Sequence record: MK773491.1
Strand: one strand, 5' to 3'
DNA: 64,000 nt
The notes under the pieces were generated by a model, which was not told the origin of the DNA, did not search any database, and saw only the letters and a list, made by a program, of their open reading frames with translations. How positions within the stretch are numbered: position 1 is the first letter of the stretch; the number at the start of each line of letters is the position of its first letter. Both the position numbers and the translations under genes were made by a program. This document shows, piece by piece, positions 1 to 48,783 of this stretch.

Positions 1-1518
1 TGTACTCAAAGTACTGAAGATTTTGGTCTACCATTTAAAATTAGATATAAAGATAAAATAGGTGATTCAGAAGTAACAACTTTAGAAGATCGTTTGGAAT
101 CGTGGGCTGAACAAAACGATTTTAAAACCAGAATTTATGAAATTGTTCGTGGTCTACTAAAATACGGAGATCAGTTCTTTGTACGTGACCCAGAAACAAT
201 GGAATGGATTTGGGTAAACCCTGCAAACGTTGAAGGTGTTTTTGTTAACGAAGAAACAGGTAAAAATCCAGTAGCTTATTTTATCCGGGATATTTCTTTT
301 AATATGCGTGATAAAGTAATGTCAAACTTGCAAATTGGTTTTGATAAAATGGCATATCCGGGATCATTACCTAATGCATTGAGTGGTTCTGCTAGTCAAT
401 TCGGTGGAATGGGTGGTGGTTATGCTAATGCTGGTAATGCACAAAGTGCTGATCCGTTTAGTATGGCTGCTGGTCGTAAAGATGTTCTTCCTGTAGCGGC
501 AGAACACGTAGTTCACCTAACACTAAATACAGGACAAGATCCAGTGTGGCCTTTTGGTACTAGTATTCTTGAATATGTCTTTAAAGTTTATAAACAAAAA
601 GAACTTCTAGAAGATAGTATCATCATCTATCGTGTACAACGTGCTCCAGAACGCCGTGTATTTAAAATTGATGTTGGTGAAATGCAAACTCACCAAGCAA
701 TGGCATATGTTGAAAGATTTAAAAATGAAATCCACCAGCGTCGTATACCTTCTAATAAAGGTGGTAGTACTTCATTGATGGATGCAGCTTATAACCCATT
801 AAGTATTTTAGAAGACTATTTCTTCCCTCAATCTTCGGAAGGTCGTGGTAGTTCAGTCGAAACTCTACCGGGTGGTGATAACTTGGGTCAAATTGATGAC
901 TTGCGTTATTTTAACAATAAATTGATTCGTGGTTTACAAATTCCAGCTTCATATCTACCACAGGGGCCAGATGATGGCGGGGTGGCTTTATTTGGAGATG
1001 GTGCAACCCAAGCAATGACCAGTGAATTGCGTTTTAACAACCAATGTATGCGTTATCAGCGTTTAATCGCCAAAGTTTTCGATATGGAATTTAAACGTTA
1101 TATGGTTAAGAATGGTTATAGTATTAGTGCTTCATCTTTTGAAGTAATCTTTAACCCACCAATTAACTTCGCTTCATATCGTAAAGCAGAATTGGATGCA
1201 AAACTAATTAGTACTTACATGTCGCTAGACGGACTTCCATATATTGCTAAACAAACAATTCTCAAGAAAATGGGCTTTGAACAAAGTGATATTGTTGAGA
1301 ACGAACAAAACTGGCTCATGGAAAATCCTGATGCATTATCATCAGCACAGAGTGGTGAACAGGCAGGATTGAAATCGGTCGGAATCGATGCTCCTAATGA
1401 TCCGGGAATGGATTTAGGTATGGATGAAGAAGGTAATATGGAAAGTGCTGATAAAGAATTCCAAGATATGGTTCAAAACGATGATTTTAACCCTAATAAT
1501 TTAGGCAATTCTTTCTAA
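1..1518 (+). CDS. gp20: Portal protein (T4 gp20-like), 5'-partial
   Basis: Frame is open from base 1. Motifs YRVQRAPERRVFKIDVG, LEDYFFP, GRGSSVETLPGGDNLGQIDDLRYF match the gp20 family; first gene of the head module. Confidence 0.95.
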   Translation, partial: CTQSTEDFGLPFKIRYKDKIGDSEVTTLEDRLESWAEQNDFKTRIYEIVRGLLKYGDQFFVRDPETMEWIWVNPANVEGVFVNEETGKNPVAYFIRDISFNMRDKVMSNLQIGFDKMAYPGSLPNALSGSASQFGGMGGGYANAGNAQSADPFSMAAGRKDVLPVAAEHVVHLTLNTGQDPVWPFGTSILEYVFKVYKQKELLEDSIIIYRVQRAPERRVFKIDVGEMQTHQAMAYVERFKNEIHQRRIPSNKGGSTSLMDAAYNPLSILEDYFFPQSSEGRGSSVETLPGGDNLGQIDDLRYFNNKLIRGLQIPASYLPQGPDDGGVALFGDGATQAMTSELRFNNQCMRYQRLIAKVFDMEFKRYMVKNGYSISASSFEVIFNPPINFASYRKAELDAKLISTYMSLDGLPYIAKQTILKKMGFEQSDIVENEQNWLMENPDALSSAQSGEQAGLKSVGIDAPNDPGMDLGMDEEGNMESADKEFQDMVQNDDFNPNNLGNSF

Positions 1519-1867: not shown

Positions 1868-1913
1868 ATGACATACTTAATTTAAAAAATTTGTATATCT
1901 ATTGGAGGATATA

Positions 1914-2780
1914 ATGGCAAATAAAAAACTATTGCAAGAAGCAATTCAGGCTTTTGCTAACAACGAACAAGACCTAGCTGCTAAGAAAATGCGTAAGTAT
2001 TTCCTCGAAGCCGCACAGGAAATTAATAAAAAACTAGAAGAAGAAATGGAAGAAGAATGCGATCTAAATGAAGCAGACGAAACCGAAGAAGAATGTGAAG
2101 AAGTTATCGAAGAAGATATCGACGGAAACATGGATTCTGGTCTAACTTCCGAAGTTCAATATCAACTAGGTGAAGAAGATGAATCTGATGAAGAAGAAGT
2201 TGACGTTCAAGACCACGATGGTGAAGAAGAAGTTGATTTTGATTCCGAAGAAGAAGTTGGCGGCGAAGATGTAAATCTATCCGGCGACGAATGGGAATCC
2301 ATCAAAGATGCATTTGCTGACCTAGAAGCTATGTTTGACCGTATTGAAGACGGCGGTGATTTCGAAGTTGATGCTGAAGGTGACGAAATGGGCGATGCTG
2401 AAGCAGAAGTTGATTTTGATGCAGATGCTGATGGTGAAGATGAATTTGCTGACATTAGTTTCGGTGACGAAAAAGTTGGCGAAGGTTACAAAATGAAACC
2501 AGTTAGCAAACCAGCTAATGATGCAGCTAAATCCAAATCTCCTGTTGCTCCAAACGCAAAATCTCCAGTAGATGGCGTTGCACCAGTTAAGATCAAAGAC
2601 GGTACTGTAGTAACTAATGATGGCGAATTGCTAAAAAATAAAGATGCTGAAACTGCTAAAGTTGAAGACATGAACAACGTAATGGACAGTGCTAAAGGCA
2701 TGATGAAAGACGCGAAGAAACCAAAAAATACTGCGGAAAAATCTCGTTCTCCACTACCTAAATCACAACCAAAATTTTAA
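1914..2780 (+). CDS. Highly acidic prohead core protein (gp67/gp68-like position)
   Basis: GGAGG RBS before ATG 1914; D/E-rich; upstream TATAAATA; located between portal and protease. Confidence 0.6.
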   Translation: MANKKLLQEAIQAFANNEQDLAAKKMRKYFLEAAQEINKKLEEEMEEECDLNEADETEEECEEVIEEDIDGNMDSGLTSEVQYQLGEEDESDEEEVDVQDHDGEEEVDFDSEEEVGGEDVNLSGDEWESIKDAFADLEAMFDRIEDGGDFEVDAEGDEMGDAEAEVDFDADADGEDEFADISFGDEKVGEGYKMKPVSKPANDAAKSKSPVAPNAKSPVDGVAPVKIKDGTVVTNDGELLKNKDAETAKVEDMNNVMDSAKGMMKDAKKPKNTAEKSRSPLPKSQPKF

Positions 2781-8254: not shown

Positions 8255-8563
8255 ATGTCTCAAATTTGTTATGTAATCACGAATCCTGCATGGCCTGAAT
8301 GGGTAAAAATTGGATTCACATCTAAATCGGAAATGAAAACACGTTTAAGTACTTATCAAACTGGAACACCTTTCCGGGATTTTGAAGTATATCATGAAGT
8401 ACACTTTGATGATGCTAAGGAAGCGGAGAAAGAGGTACATAAGCGTTTAAAGCAAATGAACGCTACAAGGAGTCCCGGTACGGAATGGTTTAAGATGCCG
8501 AAGAAATTAGCTGCTAACATGATAGATGGAGTAGCAGACGACTTAGAGAATGGACTTCTATAA
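8255..8563 (+). CDS. T5orf172/GIY-YIG family small nuclease or DNA-binding protein
   Basis: CYVITNPAWPEWVKIGFT...RLSTYQTG.P...E..VH...EWF pattern; GGAGG RBS. Confidence 0.8.
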   Translation: MSQICYVITNPAWPEWVKIGFTSKSEMKTRLSTYQTGTPFRDFEVYHEVHFDDAKEAEKEVHKRLKQMNATRSPGTEWFKMPKKLAANMIDGVADDLENGLL

Positions 8564-10753: not shown

Positions 10754-10784
10754 TTGGGACAAAAAAAGGATCATGTGATATAAT
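10754..10784 (+). promoter_or_regulatory. GGGACA-class promoter (dsbA-like/pol)
   Basis: TTGGGACA-N17-TATAAT with TGTGA extension. Confidence 0.8.
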
Positions 10785-11147: not shown

Positions 11148-11171
11148 AGCCTCCTAGTATGGAGGCTTTTT
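11148..11171 (+). terminator. Intrinsic terminator after the dsbA-like gene
   Basis: AGCCTCC-TAGTAT-GGAGGCT-TTTT. Confidence 0.75.
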
Positions 11172-11202: not shown

Positions 11203-14200
11203 ATGTATATAGATGGATTTATGGAACGTAAACGAACTGGTGATATTCTACATGTAGCAGAACGTATTAACGGTCGTCGTGTACTTCGTCAACTAGACCC
11301 TGTATATGAATACTATGTTGAATCACCAACGGGAACATTTAAAACCATTCACGGTACAATGGCTGAGAAATTAACCTTTGCTAACCAACGTGATATGCGT
11401 AGTTCCCTTGAACTACATCAAGGTCGTCGAACCTACGAATCTGACTGTAACGTTACCTTTAAAACTCTTGCACAAGAGTACATGGGTAAAGGTTCACCAG
11501 ATTTGAATATGGTATTCTTCGATATTGAAACCGACTTCCATAAGAAGCTCGGATATGCACCACCAAGTAACCCATTTAACCGTGTTACTGCAATTTCCCT
11601 TTATCAGAACTGGACAGGTAAAGATTATGTACTAACCTTACCACCTGATGATATGGAATTAGTTGAAGCACAGGATATCGTTAACCGATTGAATGAAGAA
11701 ACTAATGATCCTAACAGTGTAGTACTTCTTTACACCGAAGAAACTGAAATGTTCAATGACTTCTTTGATTTGATTGATGATGCTGATGTACTTTCTGGAT
11801 GGAACAGTGAGTTCTTCGATATTCCATACATGGTTAACCGTACTGCAAAAATCTTCAATGCTGCAACTACGGCTCGTTGGTGTTTGTGGAATAAAAAACC
11901 TGTATCTCGTGAAGCAGATATGTTTGGTAAAACAATTGTCACTTATGACTTAATCGGTCGTGTTCACCTAGATTATCTAGCGTTGTATAAGAAACACGCA
12001 GGTCAAGTCGAACAATCGTACAAACTAGACTTCATCGCAGAGAAAGTTACAAAAGAAAATAAAGTAGCGTATGAAGGTTCTCTTGACAAATTGTACAGAG
12101 AGGATTATATTACATTCCTACGTTATTCCAAACAGGATAGCATTCTTCTTAAAAAGATTGATGAGAAGTTAGACTACATCAACCTACACAACCGACTAGC
12201 ACACAAAGAATGTGTACTAATCAGTACTACAATGGGTTCTGTAGCACTAATTGACACCGCAATCATAAACCTTGCACATTCAAGAGGTGAAGTGGTATTT
12301 GATAAGAAACCACAAGAAGATGATGTTACTGAACAAGATGATCGTTATGATTACCTCATTGAAGATGAGGATGATGGTTCAGATAATGAACCAGTATCGG
12401 CAAAAGCTGCTGGTGCATGGGTACAAGATCCAGTATTAGGACTTGTAGACTACTTAGGATGTACTGACTTTAACTCACTATATCCAACAGTACTACGTAC
12501 ATTAGGTATGAGTACTGAATGTATTCTTGGACAAATTCGCCAAGATTATACAGATGCACATCTTGCAAAACGTGTAGAAGAACAACGTATGCGTTCTAAG
12601 TCTAAGAAGTTCGAACCGAACTGGACAGAAGCATGGCACGGTCTATTTGCAAGTGTTGAGTTCACGATGGTTCGTGAGCGTTCAGAACAAACACTAATTG
12701 TTGATTTGGAAGATGGCACTAGTTTCAACGTGACAGGTGCAGAGCTTCATGATATCATTTATGCTGAAGACAGTACTATTGTACTTTCTGCTAATGGTAC
12801 GTTGTTCGATAAAACTAAATCTGGGGTCATTCCAGAGATTCTAACTCAATGGTATTCTGAGCGTAAGTCTCAACAGAAGATGGTAATCGACTTCAAACAC
12901 ATTTATACTGATGGTTGGGAAATGCCAGAGGACGCTATCGATAAGATAGAGGCTGCTATGGCTCGCTACAAGCGTTCTGAGACGATGTATAGAACGAACC
13001 TACACGAAGACGATCCAGTTTATTTGATTCGTCAGGCGTTGGTACAGAGCGATTATGAGCAGGTTGGAAAGCTAATCACAGAGAACGGTCTTCTACTAGA
13101 AGATGGTCGTATCAAATGTACTAAAGAAGAGAAAAATTATTGTAAAACGCAATCTGCGTTCTGGAAGCAGAACCAACAGATTCGTAAGATTCTTCTCAAC
13201 TCTCTTTATGGTGCATTGCTCAACAAAGGTTCTAGATTCTTTGATAAACGTTTAGGTCAATCTGTAACCTTAACTGGTCGCAGTATGACTAAACATATGG
13301 CATCCCGTATCAACGAAATTTGTACTGGTGAATACAATCACCAAGGCGGCGTTGTAATTTACGGCGACACCGACTCCGTTTACTTTAGTGTAGCTCACTA
13401 CATGAAAGAACAGGGTCTACCATTTGATTTAACAAAAGAAGAAGTTGTTGATCTATATGTGAAAATTGGTGATGAAGTTGGTGCATCTTTCCCTTCCTTT
13501 ATGGATGAATATTTCAATACTGGTATTGAGAAAGGTAAAATCGTAGGTGCAGATTTGGAAATGGTAGGCTCTCGTGGTCTATTCTTGAAGAAAAAGCGTT
13601 ATGCGATCCTCAAATATTGGGAAGATGGATTCCGTAAAGACGAAGATGGTTCACCGGGTGAAATCAAGGCTATGGGATTAGAAATCAAACGTTCTGATAC
13701 ACCAAAGTATATCCAAGATTTCCTACAAGAAACTCTTATCGCATTGCTAGTTGGCGAAGGAGAAGAAGAACTACGTAATAGAGTTCGTGCATTCAAAACT
13801 ATTTTCCGTGATAAGCCCATTCAGCAGAAAGGGCAACCACGTACAGTTAAAAACTATTCGAATCTAGAAGAAGAATATAAGAAAACTGGTAAATTATCAG
13901 TATCGCATGTTCTAGCTGCGATTCAATGGAACAAACTACGTGATATATATGAAGATCAATCAGTTCCAGAAGCAACTGACGGTACTAAAGTTATCGTTTG
14001 TAAGTTAAAGCCAAACCCAATGGGAATAAAAGCTGTCGGCTACCCAATTGATTGTGCTGAATACTTACCAGAATGGTTCTTGGAGCTACCTTTTGATGAA
14101 GATGAGATGGAAAAAGCCGTTTTGACTAAGAAACTAGGTAATATTTTCGGTATTCTAAACATGGATATCGCAATCAACGAGAAGAGTACACTAGTAATGG

Positions 14201-14223
14201 ATAGTGGATTCTTCGAATGGTAA
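11203..14223 (+). CDS. gp43: Family B DNA polymerase (gp43-like)
   Basis: Exo motifs FFDIET, WNSEFFDIPY, YSKQD; polymerase motifs DFNSLYP, KILLNSLYG, YGDTDS, KKRYA. Confidence 0.97.
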   Translation: MYIDGFMERKRTGDILHVAERINGRRVLRQLDPVYEYYVESPTGTFKTIHGTMAEKLTFANQRDMRSSLELHQGRRTYESDCNVTFKTLAQEYMGKGSPDLNMVFFDIETDFHKKLGYAPPSNPFNRVTAISLYQNWTGKDYVLTLPPDDMELVEAQDIVNRLNEETNDPNSVVLLYTEETEMFNDFFDLIDDADVLSGWNSEFFDIPYMVNRTAKIFNAATTARWCLWNKKPVSREADMFGKTIVTYDLIGRVHLDYLALYKKHAGQVEQSYKLDFIAEKVTKENKVAYEGSLDKLYREDYITFLRYSKQDSILLKKIDEKLDYINLHNRLAHKECVLISTTMGSVALIDTAIINLAHSRGEVVFDKKPQEDDVTEQDDRYDYLIEDEDDGSDNEPVSAKAAGAWVQDPVLGLVDYLGCTDFNSLYPTVLRTLGMSTECILGQIRQDYTDAHLAKRVEEQRMRSKSKKFEPNWTEAWHGLFASVEFTMVRERSEQTLIVDLEDGTSFNVTGAELHDIIYAEDSTIVLSANGTLFDKTKSGVIPEILTQWYSERKSQQKMVIDFKHIYTDGWEMPEDAIDKIEAAMARYKRSETMYRTNLHEDDPVYLIRQALVQSDYEQVGKLITENGLLLEDGRIKCTKEEKNYCKTQSAFWKQNQQIRKILLNSLYGALLNKGSRFFDKRLGQSVTLTGRSMTKHMASRINEICTGEYNHQGGVVIYGDTDSVYFSVAHYMKEQGLPFDLTKEEVVDLYVKIGDEVGASFPSFMDEYFNTGIEKGKIVGADLEMVGSRGLFLKKKRYAILKYWEDGFRKDEDGSPGEIKAMGLEIKRSDTPKYIQDFLQETLIALLVGEGEEELRNRVRAFKTIFRDKPIQQKGQPRTVKNYSNLEEEYKKTGKLSVSHVLAAIQWNKLRDIYEDQSVPEATDGTKVIVCKLKPNPMGIKAVGYPIDCAEYLPEWFLELPFDEDEMEKAVLTKKLGNIFGILNMDIAINEKSTLVMDSGFFEW

Positions 14224-14234
14224 TAGGAACAATA

Positions 14235-14807
14235 ATGTCAGGAATTTTTCAACGCATTGGGGAGGCAATTGCCTCCCAAGGTAAAATCACACTAGTTGCC
14301 GCACTAAATGATGAAGAAGCAAACATTCTCATGGGTGCTGGGTTCAAAAAAGCTGGTACAATGGATCTAAATGGTTCTTTAGTTGACCTTTACGAAGTAA
14401 AAGTACAACAAATAATCAACACTACTCAACCATATCAAATTGCACGTGATATTTTTGATAAGCCTCGGAAATATGAACAACAATGGCCTGAAAACTATCG
14501 CATGTACTCTATCGGCACTGGTACTGGTCAAGCTGCTCATTTAAATTTCAAAGGAAACACCACTTCTTTGATGGATGCTGCATATGATCCACTAAGTATT
14601 TTAGAAGATTATTTCTTCCCAAGAAAAGAGGAAGAAACTCATAGAGAATTCAAAATTGAAGTTGATGATATGGATGAAGAATCCAAAAATGATTTCATTC
14701 AAAAAGTTAAAGATGAATTCCATAAATCAGGTCGCACATATTGCGATGATAGCTGGACTTCTTATAATGTAAATTACAGTGGCAACACTGACCACCGTAA
14801 CTGGTAA
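14235..14807 (+). CDS. Hypothetical protein carrying a permuted copy of the portal clip region (candidate portal mimic)
   Basis: 14562-14621 encodes TSLMDAAYDPLSILEDYFFP versus portal 769-828 TSLMDAAYNPLSILEDYFFP; 14643-14726 aligns with portal 655-738. Confidence 0.75.
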   Translation: MSGIFQRIGEAIASQGKITLVAALNDEEANILMGAGFKKAGTMDLNGSLVDLYEVKVQQIINTTQPYQIARDIFDKPRKYEQQWPENYRMYSIGTGTGQAAHLNFKGNTTSLMDAAYDPLSILEDYFFPRKEEETHREFKIEVDDMDEESKNDFIQKVKDEFHKSGRTYCDDSWTSYNVNYSGNTDHRNW

Positions 14808-14823: not shown

Positions 14824-14854
14824 TTGGGACGTACCGAGATTTATGTGATATAAT
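14824..14854 (+). promoter_or_regulatory. GGGACA-class promoter (clamp operon)
   Basis: TTGGGACG-N17-TATAAT, TGTGA. Confidence 0.8.
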
Positions 14855-14913: not shown

Positions 14914-15645
14914 ATGGATTTACGCAACGTTCTACGCGACCTAGTTAGCACTACTACTGGTATGGATTTCTCTTGTATCGCAGTTTCACGAGAAGACCGT
15001 GGCGAAGGTAATCGTGTTTACATGGAAGCATATACAGATGATAAGACTCTAATCATGAGAGCCGAAACTAAAGAAGACGTACCAGAAGTTGAAGGTCGTT
15101 TTGGTCTAGGTAACCTCGGAATGCTTCAAGGTCTTATGAATCTAAAAACCTACAACTCCGAATCTGCTAAGATCGCAGTCAATGCAGCAAACGGTGTTGT
15201 TAAAAGTCTAGCATTTACATCTGATGATGCAAGTACTAACTTTATTGTTCAATCGGAAAAATTTATTCCTAACCAACCACGCTTTACTCCACAACCATAT
15301 GATGTACAGGTTACACCTAGTGCTGCAAAGGTTGGCGAACTAAAGTCTTTCTCTAGTGTATTCAAATCTTTTTCTGCTTTAGTTACTCCTTATACTGAAG
15401 GTGATACACTATATTTCCACGTTGGTGAGAAGAATAAATCAAACCACTCAGGTGCATTAGCTTTCACCAAAACTGATGGTGAACTAAAACTAGGATATGG
15501 TTATGCGATTGATCGTCTTCTTCAAGCACTAAATCGTGTGTCTAATGCTGAAGAAATTACCCTTGGTATTACAAAAACTGGTATGCTAAACGTTACTGTT
15601 GACACTGGCATTACTGTGTTTAAATTCTTCATCCAAGGTAACTAA
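14914..15645 (+). CDS. Probable DNA polymerase sliding clamp (gp45-like)
   Basis: 243 aa, alternating beta/alpha pattern with two-domain size; near the polymerase; own promoter. Assigned by size, fold pattern and context only. Confidence 0.55.
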   Translation: MDLRNVLRDLVSTTTGMDFSCIAVSREDRGEGNRVYMEAYTDDKTLIMRAETKEDVPEVEGRFGLGNLGMLQGLMNLKTYNSESAKIAVNAANGVVKSLAFTSDDASTNFIVQSEKFIPNQPRFTPQPYDVQVTPSAAKVGELKSFSSVFKSFSALVTPYTEGDTLYFHVGEKNKSNHSGALAFTKTDGELKLGYGYAIDRLLQALNRVSNAEEITLGITKTGMLNVTVDTGITVFKFFIQGN

Positions 15646-15652
15646 TAAATCA

Positions 15653-15676
15653 AGGGGAACTATGTTCCCCTATTTT
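15653..15676 (+). terminator. Intrinsic terminator after the clamp gene
   Basis: AGGGGAAC-TAT-GTTCCCCT-ATTTT. Confidence 0.65.
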
Positions 15677-16327: not shown

Positions 16328-16531
16328 ATGCCATTATATACATACAAATGTCAAAATGAAGAATGTGATCATTCTGAAGATAAAATTGTCAAAATTTCAA
16401 ATCGTGACGATGAGCGGAAATGTCCATCATGTGAAGATGGATTACTAAAGCGTGAAGAATTCACTGCTGGTGATAAAGGTGCATCATTCCGTTTCAAAGG
16501 AAACTGGTTCAATACTACAGGGAGATACTAA
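16328..16531 (+). CDS. FmdB-family zinc-ribbon protein
   Basis: MPLYTYKC...C...CPSC...FKGNWF pattern. Confidence 0.85.
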   Translation: MPLYTYKCQNEECDHSEDKIVKISNRDDERKCPSCEDGLLKREEFTAGDKGASFRFKGNWFNTTGRY

Positions 16532-16821
16532 TGAGTACTTTAAAAATGATTAATGACTATGTTCTAGTGGAACTAGTTGAAAACCACACTACCAGTACTG
16601 GTGGTATTATTCTAACCAACGTTGAGCCACCTTGCATTGGTCGTGTTGTTTCAGTTGGCCCCGGACGTATCCTAAATAACGGTGAAAGGGCTGAACACAA
16701 CATTGAAGTTGGCGAAGAAATTGTATTTGGTAAATCTTCCTTGAATCAGCCTCTAGAACACGAAAAAGTAACATATTATGTTATGAAAATTGATGAGGTA
16801 TTTGGTAAAAGAAATGGCTAA
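16531..16821 (+). CDS. groES: Co-chaperonin GroES
   Basis: DYVLVE, TSTGGIIL mobile loop, GRVVSVGPG, VGEEIVF. Confidence 0.92.
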   Translation: MSTLKMINDYVLVELVENHTTSTGGIILTNVEPPCIGRVVSVGPGRILNNGERAEHNIEVGEEIVFGKSSLNQPLEHEKVTYYVMKIDEVFGKRNG

Positions 16822-20551: not shown

Positions 20552-20559
20552 TATAAATA
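20552..20559 (+). promoter_or_regulatory. T4-type late promoter
   Basis: TATAAATA before terL. Confidence 0.7.
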
Positions 20560-20593: not shown

Positions 20594-22240
<1,647 letters not shown>

Positions 22241-22249
22241 GATTTATAA

Positions 22250-23610
<1,361 letters not shown>

Positions 23611-23658: not shown

Positions 23659-23689
23659 TTGGGACATTTTGAGAAAAATGTGATATAAT
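23659..23689 (+). promoter_or_regulatory. GGGACA-class promoter (gp32, proximal)
   Basis: TTGGGACA-N17-TATAAT, TGTGA. Confidence 0.8.
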
Positions 23690-45718: not shown

Positions 45719-45901
45719 ATGAGCGACGTTTTTTCTTTTATGAGAGATGTTGAGTACGTAATAGTACTAGAAGGTTCTATTCAATTAACAGGTATGGTTG
45801 AAGAAACTTATGATAACGGTATTCAGTTACATGATGGAACCTGCATTCCACAGGATAAAATTTTATTTTTCAAAGCAAATCTTGGGACAAATCCCGAATA
45901 A
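45719..45901 (+). CDS. Small hypothetical beta-rich protein
   Basis: GGAG RBS before ATG 45719. Confidence 0.5.
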   Translation: MSDVFSFMRDVEYVIVLEGSIQLTGMVEETYDNGIQLHDGTCIPQDKILFFKANLGTNPE

Positions 45902-45912
45902 TGTGATATAAT
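45882..45912 (+). promoter_or_regulatory. GGGACA-class promoter (basic protein/yggL/mazG-like)
   Basis: TTGGGACA-N17-TATAAT, TGTGA. Confidence 0.8.
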
Positions 45913-48752: not shown

Positions 48753-48783
48753 TTGGGACAAATCGGAAATGATGTGATATAAT
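48753..48783 (+). promoter_or_regulatory. GGGACA-class promoter (DHFR/rnhA/dda operon)
   Basis: TTGGGACA-N17-TATAAT, TGTGA. Confidence 0.8.

What the first reader, a model, noticed from the sequence alone, without database searches (positions are those of the whole stretch)
14235..14807. Early-expressed protein carrying a circularly permuted copy of the phage's own portal clip: candidate portal mimic/decoy
Seen: nt 14562-14621 encode TSLMDAAYDPLSILEDYFFP, versus portal nt 769-828 TSLMDAAYNPLSILEDYFFP (19/20 aa). The 60-nt blocks differ at 8 positions: six synonymous changes plus one N-to-D codon, so the peptide rather than the DNA appears to be conserved. Immediately downstream, 14643-14726 (REFKIEVDDMDEESKNDFIQKVKDEFHK) aligns without gaps to portal 655-738 (RVFKIDVGEMQTHQAMAYVERFKNEIHQ; 9/28 identical plus many conservative changes). 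In the portal that segment comes BEFORE the first one, so the order is swapped. The rest of the protein is unrelated to portal, and the gene is coupled to the DNA polymerase rather than to a late promoter. Known: this stretch corresponds to the gp20 clip region, where terminase docks, and bacterial Avs4 STAND sensors recognise portal proteins with contacts that include the clip. Inference: a monomeric, self-complemented clip mimic made before the true portal could titrate portal-sensing defence, modulate terminase/portal assembly, or poison competing phages' portals.
Basis: partly seen in the sequence, partly recalled or inferred. Interest (0 to 1): 0.9.

Follow-up and report, generated by a model that had tools for sequence, protein, structure and literature searches.

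The report
Soluble rearranged copy of portal clip
A small protein that this jumbo phage makes alongside its DNA polymerase carries a re-ordered copy of the portal "clip", the knob where the DNA-packaging motor and the neck dock. The copy is real, conserved and translated, but what it binds is still untested.

Summary
The window is Salmonella jumbo phage 7t3, a Rak2-like phage. ORF 14235-14807 (190 aa) lies between the DNA polymerase and a clamp-like gene. It carries two portal-derived segments in swapped order. Residues 106-133 match portal 323-350 (22/28 identical, E 2e-12; profile E 2.4e-14). Residues 135-166 match portal 287-318 (profile E 4.5e-9).

Mapped onto T4 gp20, the two segments make up most of the clip domain (T4 279-358). 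The second one corresponds to T4 peptide 288-311, which binds terminase gp17 and blocks packaging. Metagenomic relatives carry a fuller permuted clip. One relative, P0037, has the clip in native order, colinear over 72 residues (E 3e-19).

The block is the most constrained part of the family: 72% amino-acid identity against 39-49% in the N-terminal domain and linker, at saturated synonymous divergence. An identical protein was detected by LC-MS/MS in phage fENko-Kae01. The gene lies behind a replication-class promoter, not a late one.

AlphaFold2 did not fold the clip part as a monomer, so the "self-complemented monomer" idea is unproven. No test of Avs4 decoy action was possible. My best guess, at about 0.35, is a soluble clip mimic that engages a clip-docking partner, most likely the large terminase.

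The parts
14235..14807 (+). The ORF (190 aa plus stop), member of PHROG 25089. Identical protein: ENKO_294 of phage fENko-Kae01.
14225..14228 (+). AGGA ribosome-binding site, 6 nt before the ATG at 14235 and 1 nt after the polymerase stop codon (14221-14223).
   Evidence: read from the sequence
14235..14399 (+). N-terminal domain (residues 1-55, motif QRIGEA), predicted helix-strand-helix-strand-strand. It is the only part shared by every family member and is unrelated to the portal.
   Evidence: Foldseek found nothing significant
14400..14549 (+). Linker (residues 56-105): variable, Pro/Tyr/Trp-rich, low confidence, no portal similarity.
14550..14621 (+). Portal-like block KGNTTSLMDAAYDPLSILEDYFFP (residues 106-129). 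It corresponds to portal residues 323-346, which are T4 gp20 about 316-337 (distal clip loop plus strand b2).
14643..14726 (+). Second portal-like segment REFKIEVDDMDEESKNDFIQKVKDEFHK (residues 137-164). It corresponds to portal 289-316, which are T4 gp20 283-310 (strand b1 plus helix a6). It overlaps the T4 gp17-binding peptide 288-311.
14727..14804 (+). C-terminal tail (SWTSY...RNW). It is conserved only in the 7t3-like clade and has no portal similarity.
643..891 (+). Clip domain of the true portal gene (7t3 portal residues 285-367, equivalent to T4 279-358). The source segments lie at 655-738 and 757-828. The portal gene itself runs off the left end of the window and ends at 1518.
10754..10784 (+). 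Phage promoter motif TTGGGAC-N16-TGTGATATAAT heading the unit: 98-aa gene, polymerase, this ORF.
   Evidence: 6 copies in the window, 0 expected
14824..14854 (+). The same promoter motif just after the ORF. It starts the clamp-like gene's unit and so marks the end of the ORF's unit.
11203..14223 (+). Family B DNA polymerase (gp43-like), immediately upstream of the ORF.
20606..22237 (+). Large terminase (TerL), preceded by TATAAATA at 20552. It is the proposed ligand, not part of the ORF.

Best explanation
The ORF encodes a non-structural accessory protein made with the replication genes. It consists of a small N-terminal a/b domain of unknown role, a linker, and a circularly permuted paralogue of the phage's own portal clip domain.

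I propose that the clip part works by mimicry. It offers, in soluble form, the surface that normally protrudes from the portal vertex, and so engages a protein that docks there. The most likely ligand is the large terminase (TerL, window 20606-22237). The effect would be to hold or tune TerL, either its nuclease and ATPase activity or the moment it starts packaging, until proheads are ready.

Shown here: the homology, the permutation, purifying selection, translation, and placement in a non-late transcription unit. Inferred: the clip-like fold, the ligand, and the effect on packaging.
For: 1. Both halves of the C-terminal part are homologous to the portal clip.
2. In T4 the clip is exposed outside the capsid and is the docking site of gp17 and later gp13. 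A 24-residue peptide, gp20 288-311, binds gp17 and inhibits packaging (Sun et al. 2015, PMC4493910; PMC9958956). Segment 2 of the ORF is the positional homologue of that peptide (alignment; table).
3. Family-wide conservation covers the hydrophobic stripe of helix a6, the strand cores (K292, I293 and AAY-PLSILEDY) and the distal loop. The loop includes the equivalent of T4 N323, a residue at the docking face. The hydrophobic residue at the T4 M292 position is kept as L or M.
4. A stand-alone clip miniprotein without the N-terminal domain exists (P0070). This suggests the clip part is functional by itself.
5. The protein is translated (5 spectra). Its homologue CBB_264 is absent from the CBB virion mass-spectrometry list.
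6. The gene sits in the polymerase unit, between two replication-class promoters, with no late promoter.
Against: - No binding data exist, and no complex prediction was possible with these tools.
- The equivalents of the T4 gp17-contact residues R295 and K296 are not conserved. They are mostly acidic or variable in the ORFs.
- The Rak2-like portal tip itself differs from T4's, so the T4 contact map may not transfer.
- Mimasvirus members keep the b2 block but have no detectable b1-a6. Eneladusvirus and Asteriusvirus members lack a recognisable clip. TerL control therefore cannot be essential.
- AlphaFold2 does not fold the clip part as a monomer.
- The most conserved elements are the strands that join portal subunits. 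That fits portal binding at least as well as TerL binding.
Confidence: 0.35

Rival explanations
1. Portal-subunit binder. The conserved strands pair with the complementary strands of unassembled portal protomers by beta-sheet augmentation. The protein would then act as a chaperone or cap that prevents premature or aberrant ring formation, or that controls when the initiator ring forms.
For: - In T4 the three-stranded clip sheet (one strand from one subunit, two from its neighbour) is the only place with main-chain hydrogen bonds between portal subunits.
- Those strands are exactly what the ORF family conserves best.
- Their partner, the portal clip, is invariant in all ten portals examined.
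- Members carrying only the b2 block, or only b1-a6, could still cap one side of a protomer.
- AlphaFold2 leaves the region unfolded in isolation, as expected for a segment that folds on binding.
- The protein was recovered in a >300 kDa fraction, which is weak evidence.
Against: - There is no direct evidence of portal binding.
- The homologue was not found in CBB virions, although a chaperone need not be.
- Several genera assemble the same invariant portal without a recognisable clip copy.
- The >300 kDa fraction also held the polymerase and many other non-structural proteins.
Confidence: 0.25
2. Immune decoy or inhibitor. The soluble clip copy, made before the portal, occupies or blocks host sensors that recognise portal protein (Avs4, Avs11, RAZR) without activating them.
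For: - Host systems do sense portal monomers (Avs4, Avs11) and portal rings (RAZR) (PMC12642450, PMC12803255, PMC13017515).
- Expression with the replication genes would pre-empt the late portal.
- Patchy retention, duplication and reshuffling of the clip part among lineages resembles arms-race genes.
- Keeping the portal's invariant motif is what a decoy of a conserved epitope would require.
Against: - Avs recognition is described as broad shape complementarity to the whole fold, whereas this copy covers about 60 of 575 residues.
- I could not verify that Avs4 contacts the clip.
- The gene has a fixed syntenic position inside the core replication operon in every Rak2-like genus, unlike typical anti-defence islands.
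- There is no PADLOC hit and no anti-defence signature.
Confidence: 0.15
3. Tether between replication and packaging. The universal N-terminal domain binds a replisome component (polymerase or the adjacent clamp-like protein), and the clip part recruits TerL or neck proteins to replicating DNA.
For: - The gene order polymerase, ORF, clamp-like gene is invariant.
- The N-terminal domain is kept even where the clip is lost.
- In T4, packaging is mechanistically coupled to the clamp-dependent late transcription machinery. This comes from Black and Peng 2006, seen only as a title in the reference list of PMC9958956; I did not read the paper.
Against: - This is purely contextual, with no motif or structural evidence for clamp or polymerase binding.
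- The stand-alone clip protein P0070 has no N-terminal domain.
Confidence: 0.1
4. The portal-derived piece has been exapted as a structural module, or is a slowly decaying relic. It would have no functional link to the portal, terminase or immunity.
For: Several lineages have lost or degraded it. The helix surface residues diverge freely.
Against: - The block is the most constrained part of the protein at saturated synonymous divergence.
- About 11 positions are nearly invariant and identical to the portal across clades whose remaining sequence is 35-60% identical.
- That pattern is hard to explain without a shared interaction.
Confidence: 0.1

Closest known systems
Clip domain of the T4-type portal protein (gp20; PF07230; PDB 3JA7), including the gp17-binding peptide 288-311
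   Same: The two ORF segments are sequence homologues of portal strand b1 plus helix a6, and of the distal loop plus strand b2 (plus b3 in relatives such as P0007). Core and strand residues are conserved.
   Different: - It covers only about 60 of 575 residues; there is no wing, stem or crown.
- The order is circularly permuted.
- It is fused to an unrelated N-terminal domain.
- It is made from a replication-class unit.
- The Pfam score is below the family cut-off (15.3 against 22.9 bits).
- The tip residues that contact gp17 in T4 are not conserved.
Self-complemented (donor-strand-fused) pilin subunits of chaperone-usher pili. This is a structural analogy from my own knowledge.
   Same: A strand normally supplied by the neighbouring subunit is fused in cis, so that a normally polymeric interface can close within one chain. 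The permutation places b1 directly after b2(-b3), which would allow this.
   Different: Those constructs are engineered, and the fold is unrelated. AlphaFold2 gave no confident cis sheet here.
Packaging-interference proteins of phage satellites that bind terminase subunits (for example SaPI Ppi and PICI Rpp, which bind the small terminase). This is from my own knowledge.
   Same: They are small proteins that would redirect or hold the packaging enzyme by direct binding.
   Different: They are encoded by satellites to act against a helper phage, they target TerS, and they have no homology to the portal.
Phage protein mimics and decoys used against host defence (for example the DNA mimic Ocr). 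This is from my own knowledge.
   Same: The concept is the same: an early-made mimic occupies a binding site meant for a phage component.
   Different: No known example copies a piece of the phage's own portal, and nothing here shows an effect on defence.

Membership tests
PHROG 25089 (unknown function) | Significant match to the family HMM | tested here: met
   E 2.2e-23 over ORF residues 3-134. The portal itself touches profile positions 123-150.
T4-type portal protein (PF07230 Portal_T4) | Score above Pfam's gathering cut-off, with coverage of wing, stem, clip and crown | tested here: not met
   15.3 bits against a cut-off of 22.9, covering only profile positions 245-267 of 433. The protein is 190 aa against 575 aa. 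It is not a portal.
Circularly permuted domain paralogue | Two adjacent segments, each homologous to the parent, in swapped order | tested here: met
   ORF 106-133 matches portal 323-350, and ORF 135-166 matches portal 287-318. In P0007, residues 113-147 match portal 323-358 and residues 148-175 match portal 288-316.
Circularly permuted domain paralogue | Existence of a non-permuted relative or a duplication intermediate | tested here: met
   P0037 has the same N-terminal domain with the clip in native order, colinear with portal 278-349 (E 3e-19). P0033 carries a duplicated block.
Circularly permuted domain paralogue | The same three-dimensional fold as the parent domain | tested here: inconclusive
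   AlphaFold2 gave pLDDT about 43-55 in the clip part, with only the a6-like helix predicted. Foldseek returned no portal hit.
Terminase-binding portal peptide (T4 gp20 288-311) | Positional homology to the peptide | tested here: met
   The alignment with the residue numbers and the table show ORF 142-164 equivalent to T4 288-310.
Terminase-binding portal peptide (T4 gp20 288-311) | Conservation of the gp17-contact residues (T4 N291, M292, R295, K296) | tested here: inconclusive
   The M292 position is kept as L or M. The R295 and K296 positions are variable or acidic. The Rak2-like portal differs from T4 there too.
Terminase-binding portal peptide (T4 gp20 288-311) | Binds TerL and inhibits packaging | not testable with these tools
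   Needs biochemistry or complex prediction.
Anti-defence decoy of portal sensors (Avs4, Avs11, RAZR) | Binds the sensor or relieves portal-triggered toxicity | not testable with these tools
   The literature shows only that these sensors recognise portals. There is no PADLOC match.
Virion structural protein | Detected in purified virions | tested here: inconclusive
   The homologue CBB_264 is absent from the CsCl-purified CBB virion list. ENKO_294 was detected only in an ultrafiltered lysate that also held the polymerase and other non-structural proteins.
GNAT acetyltransferase (N-terminal domain) | Significant fold or sequence match, and a complete fold | tested here: not met
   The best Foldseek hits are GNAT C-terminal halves at E 0.2-1 and TM about 0.2. 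There is no Pfam hit, and the domain is only 55 aa.

The most novel reading that the evidence does not exclude
Rak2-like jumbo phages make, during the replication phase, a soluble and internally complemented copy of the portal's docking knob. This copy would act as a checkpoint or decoy. Either it holds the terminase (or portal protomers) in check to couple packaging to replication, or it blinds host sensors that recognise portal protein. It would be the first case of a virus using a re-ordered piece of its own portal as a regulator or anti-immune decoy.
Probability: 0.2. Interest if true: 0.9.

Novelty: categorically new. Interest (0 to 1): 0.7.

Why it matters
The portal clip is the hub where the packaging motor and later the neck dock, and portals are now known triggers of bacterial immunity. 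A conserved, translated, non-late protein that carries a permuted copy of exactly this domain is a natural probe of those interactions. It could reveal a checkpoint between replication and packaging in large phages, a portal assembly chaperone, or a new type of anti-defence decoy.

It is also a clean natural example of circular permutation. Native-order and duplicated relatives are still present in metagenomes, which is useful for studying domain evolution. Each hypothesis can be tested directly with ordinary phage genetics and biochemistry in laboratory strains.

Tried and rejected
- **Recent gene conversion or assembly artefact.** Rejected. The ORF block's DNA is no closer to its own portal (58/72) than to other phages' portals (56-59/72). 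Same-codon use is only marginally above expectation (13 observed, 8.85 expected, P 0.035). P0037's clip is only 47% identical to portals, so it is not a chimeric contig.
- **The ORF copy co-evolves with its own portal.** Not testable. The portal clip is invariant in all ten portals examined, including those of phages with divergent ORFs.
- **The linker is a decayed first copy of b1-a6 (a tandem-duplication relic).** No profile support.
- **Asteriusvirus short forms (121Q type) retain b1-a6.** No significant similarity (hhalign E 0.62). This is only suggested by P0037 and P0048.
- **Structure route.** Both AlphaFold2 jobs gave low confidence. Foldseek against the PDB found nothing significant. 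A PDB profile search gave only chance hits to the integrin beta-3 tail (E 0.4).
- **PADLOC.** Nothing found.
- **Literature on Avs4-clip contacts.** The primary paper is not held, and no paper describing a portal-clip mimic was found.
- **IMG/VR scan.** It added no new architectures.

Full report
**Identity of the window**

The window is 100% identical over the 5-kb stretch compared to Salmonella phage 7t3 (MK773491.1; window position 1 is record position 248001). Phages SE_PL, Munch, PHA46 and Klebsiella phage fENko-Kae01 are 99.4-100% identical over that stretch. These are Rak2-like jumbo myoviruses with T4-type head and replication genes. Features in the window:
- the portal, cut by the left end, ending at 1518 (Pfam Portal_T4 E 1e-99);
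- a family B DNA polymerase at 11203-14223;
- the ORF of interest at 14235-14807;
- a 243-aa gene at 14914-15645, annotated in fENko-Kae01 as clamp-like (gp45) by HHpred;
- the large terminase at 20606-22237.

**Check of the observation**

Every sequence statement holds.
- The 20-residue peptides differ only by N to D. The 60-nt blocks differ at 8 positions: six synonymous codons plus AAC to GAT.
- BLASTP extends the match to 22/28 identical, E 2e-12.
- The second segment is marginal in the pairwise comparison (E 8e-4; 0.019 by tblastn).
- It becomes secure with relatives. A sub-alignment of only that segment from 30 family members hits portal residues 287-318 (hhalign 96%, E 4.5e-9).
- The block hits portal 323-370 (98%, E 2.4e-14).
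- The N-terminal domain, linker and tail show no portal similarity.
- No third clip-like locus exists in the window.
- The true start is 14235. An AGGA lies 6 nt upstream, homologues start MSNIYQRIGE, and the fENko-Kae01 CDS is 190 aa.

**What the two segments are**

I aligned the full 7t3 portal to T4 gp20 (PDB 3JA7 and 6UZC). I used the residue numbers of Sun et al. 2015 (PMC4493910) as a check: N291, M292, R295, K296, R338, K342 and T349 all fall where the paper places them.
- Segment 2 (REFKIEVDDMDEESKNDFIQKVKDEFHK) corresponds to T4 283-310, that is clip strand b1 plus helix a6.
- The block (KGNTTSLMDAAYDPLSILEDYFFP) corresponds to T4 about 316-337, the distal loop plus strand b2.
- The T4 clip domain is residues 279-358 (three strands plus a6). 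It protrudes from the capsid and is the docking site of terminase gp17 and later neck protein gp13.
- A 24-residue peptide, 288-311, binds gp17 and inhibits packaging. ORF segment 2 is the positional homologue of that peptide.
- The three-stranded clip sheet is built from one strand of one subunit and two of its neighbour. It is the only main-chain hydrogen-bonded contact between portal subunits.
- The C-terminal arm of gp13 inserts between the a6 helices of adjacent clips (PMC12929587).

**The family**

A homologue sits directly after the polymerase in every Rak2-like lineage examined. Thirty relatives were found in the 90%-clustered database. About 35 family representatives were found in the exhaustive 50%-clustered search, which also pulled in portals through two separate stretches. 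The N-terminal domain (QRIGEA motif) is universal, while the C-terminal part is modular:
- **7t3-like and Hallingskeid-like members** have the permuted arrangement. Several, such as P0006 and P0007, carry a fuller copy...TTSLMDAAYNPLSILEDYFFPEATGRGNSVET followed directly by RTFKIDVGDLxxGKELEYVEKFKKEIHK. This is b2, the inner clip loop and b3 joined directly to b1-a6. BLASTP of P0007 gives two hits to the portal, E 2e-15 and 2e-8.
- **P0037**, whose N-terminal domain is Asteriusvirus-like, has the clip in native order. It is colinear with portal 278-349 over 72 residues without gaps (E 3e-19).
- **P0033** has a duplicated block.
- **P0034** keeps b1-a6, but its block has decayed.
- **Mimasvirus members** (GAP32, XbC2, CBB, Kaldavass) keep the block plus a short helix.
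- **Eneladusvirus members** have a degraded block.
- **Asteriusvirus short forms** (121Q) have no detectable clip.
- **P0070** is a 90-aa stand-alone clip protein in native order, without the N-terminal domain. It lies in an array of small genes on an unrelated contig.

The simplest history is a single capture of the clip in native order, followed by duplication and loss that produced the permuted form. ORF copies in several lineages share AAYDP where portals have AAYNP.

**Selection**

- The portal block KGGSTSLMDAAYNPLSILEDYFFP is invariant in the eight isolate portals. It is also invariant in the portals of the two metagenomic phages whose ORFs are most divergent. Co-variation between ORF and portal therefore cannot be tested.
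- Among ORFs, the block has pN/pS 0.29 at pS about 0.65, and 72% amino-acid identity against 39-49% in the N-terminal domain and linker.
- Eleven positions are nearly invariant and identical to the portal.
- In segment 2 the strand core (K, I, D/E, V) and a hydrophobic stripe along the helix are kept. The exposed tip varies. The T4 M292 position stays L or M, while the R295 and K296 positions are variable or acidic.
- The DNA of the ORF block is no closer to its own portal than to other phages' portals. The excess of shared codons is marginal (P 0.035). The likeness is therefore maintained at protein level and not by recent conversion.

**Expression**

- A phage-specific promoter motif, TTGGGAC-N16-TGTGATATAAT, occurs six times in the window against 0 expected.
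- One copy, at 10754, heads the unit of the 98-aa gene, the polymerase and the ORF. Another, at 14824, lies just after the ORF, ahead of the clamp-like gene.
- Late-type TATAAATA motifs lie ahead of head genes and TerL (1860, 3449, 20552) and not ahead of this ORF.
- The CBB paper assigns a similar divergent sigma-70-like promoter to the replication region, and ATAAATA to structural genes (PMC5259590).
- The identical protein ENKO_294 of fENko-Kae01 was identified by LC-MS/MS with 5 spectra, against 13 for the polymerase, 52 for the portal and 46 for the clamp-like protein. The sample was a >300 kDa ultrafiltrate of lysate that the authors say cannot prove virion association (PMC11218385).
- The homologue CBB_264 is absent from the list for CsCl-purified CBB virions.
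- The protein is thus translated, of low abundance, and probably non-structural.

**Structure prediction**

Two AlphaFold2 runs were made, on the window ORF with 30 sequences and on P0007 with 29.
- Both gave a moderately confident N-terminal helix-strand-helix-strand-strand domain (pLDDT about 60-84) and the a6-like helix (65-77).
- Both left the block and the strands at pLDDT 43-55.
- Foldseek found nothing significant. The best hits were GNAT C-terminal halves for the N-terminal domain, at E 0.2 or worse.
- A self-contained monomeric clip is therefore not supported. With so shallow an alignment it is not excluded either. The result is equally compatible with a segment that folds on binding a partner.

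**Interpretation**

The homology is established. The function is inferred.

I rank highest (about 0.35) a soluble clip mimic that engages a clip-docking partner, most likely TerL. The homologous T4 peptide binds gp17 and blocks packaging, and the distal-face loop and the a6 core are conserved.

Close behind (about 0.25) is binding to unassembled portal protomers by strand complementation. The best-conserved elements are exactly the inter-subunit strands, and their partner is invariant.

Three points weaken it:
- the small share of the fold that is copied;
- the described whole-fold mode of Avs recognition;
- the gene's fixed place in the core replication operon.

A replication-to-packaging tether and a functionless relic each get about 0.1. 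The relic reading is disfavoured by the selection data.

**Novelty**

I found no description of a separate, permuted portal-clip paralogue (and my own knowledge). The family is listed only as PHROG 25089, function unknown. The feature is real, conserved, expressed and easy to test.

Noticed in passing
window 10754-10784, 14824-14854, 23576-23606, 23659-23689, 45882-45912, 48753-48783: A phage-specific promoter-like motif, TTGGGAC-N16-TGTGATATAAT (extended -10), occurs six times on the + strand against 0 expected. It resembles the 'divergent RpoD-like' promoter reported for the replication region of CBB and GAP32.
   Followed up: partly
window 14914-15645: This 243-aa protein (PHROG 12062, E 2e-111) has no Pfam or PDB sequence hit. 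The fENko-Kae01 record annotates it as clamp-like (RB69 gp45) by HHpred, and it was abundant in that phage's proteome (46 spectra). The CBB paper had reported gp45 as missing from Rak2-like phages.
   Followed up: partly
L022 492-764 (Logan SRR30726806 contig, protein P0070): A 90-aa stand-alone protein consists of the end of a portal stem helix plus clip b1-a6-b2 in native order. It sits in an array of small overlapping genes of an unidentified phage. Its best matches are Rak2-like portals (about 45% identity).
   Followed up: partly
window 1902-2780: This extremely acidic 292-aa protein (long runs of D and E) lies between the portal and the prohead protease, preceded by TATAAATA at 1860. It is presumably a scaffold or core protein.
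   Followed up: no
window 8255-8563: This 102-aa gene lies between the head genes and the polymerase. Its syntenic counterparts in metagenomic relatives carry Pfam T5orf172/MUG113 hits, so it may be a remnant of a GIY-YIG-type homing endonuclease.
   Followed up: no
window 11148-11167 and 15653-15671: Two strong terminator-like hairpins. One lies between the 98-aa gene and the polymerase, so read-through or a weak internal promoter must feed the polymerase and the ORF. The other is a bidirectional-looking hairpin after the clamp-like gene.
   Followed up: no
window 16328-16821: A zinc-ribbon miniprotein (67 aa) is followed by a 96-aa gene that, by synteny with L018 and L025, is a GroES/Cpn10-like co-chaperonin. 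This places a gp31-type assembly chaperone in the same replication-class region.
   Followed up: no
ORF residues about 75-113 (window 14457-14573): The family profile's linker gives a chance-level match (E 0.4) to the integrin beta-3 cytoplasmic tail (NPLY...NITYRGT). I judge this meaningless and record it only for completeness.
   Followed up: yes
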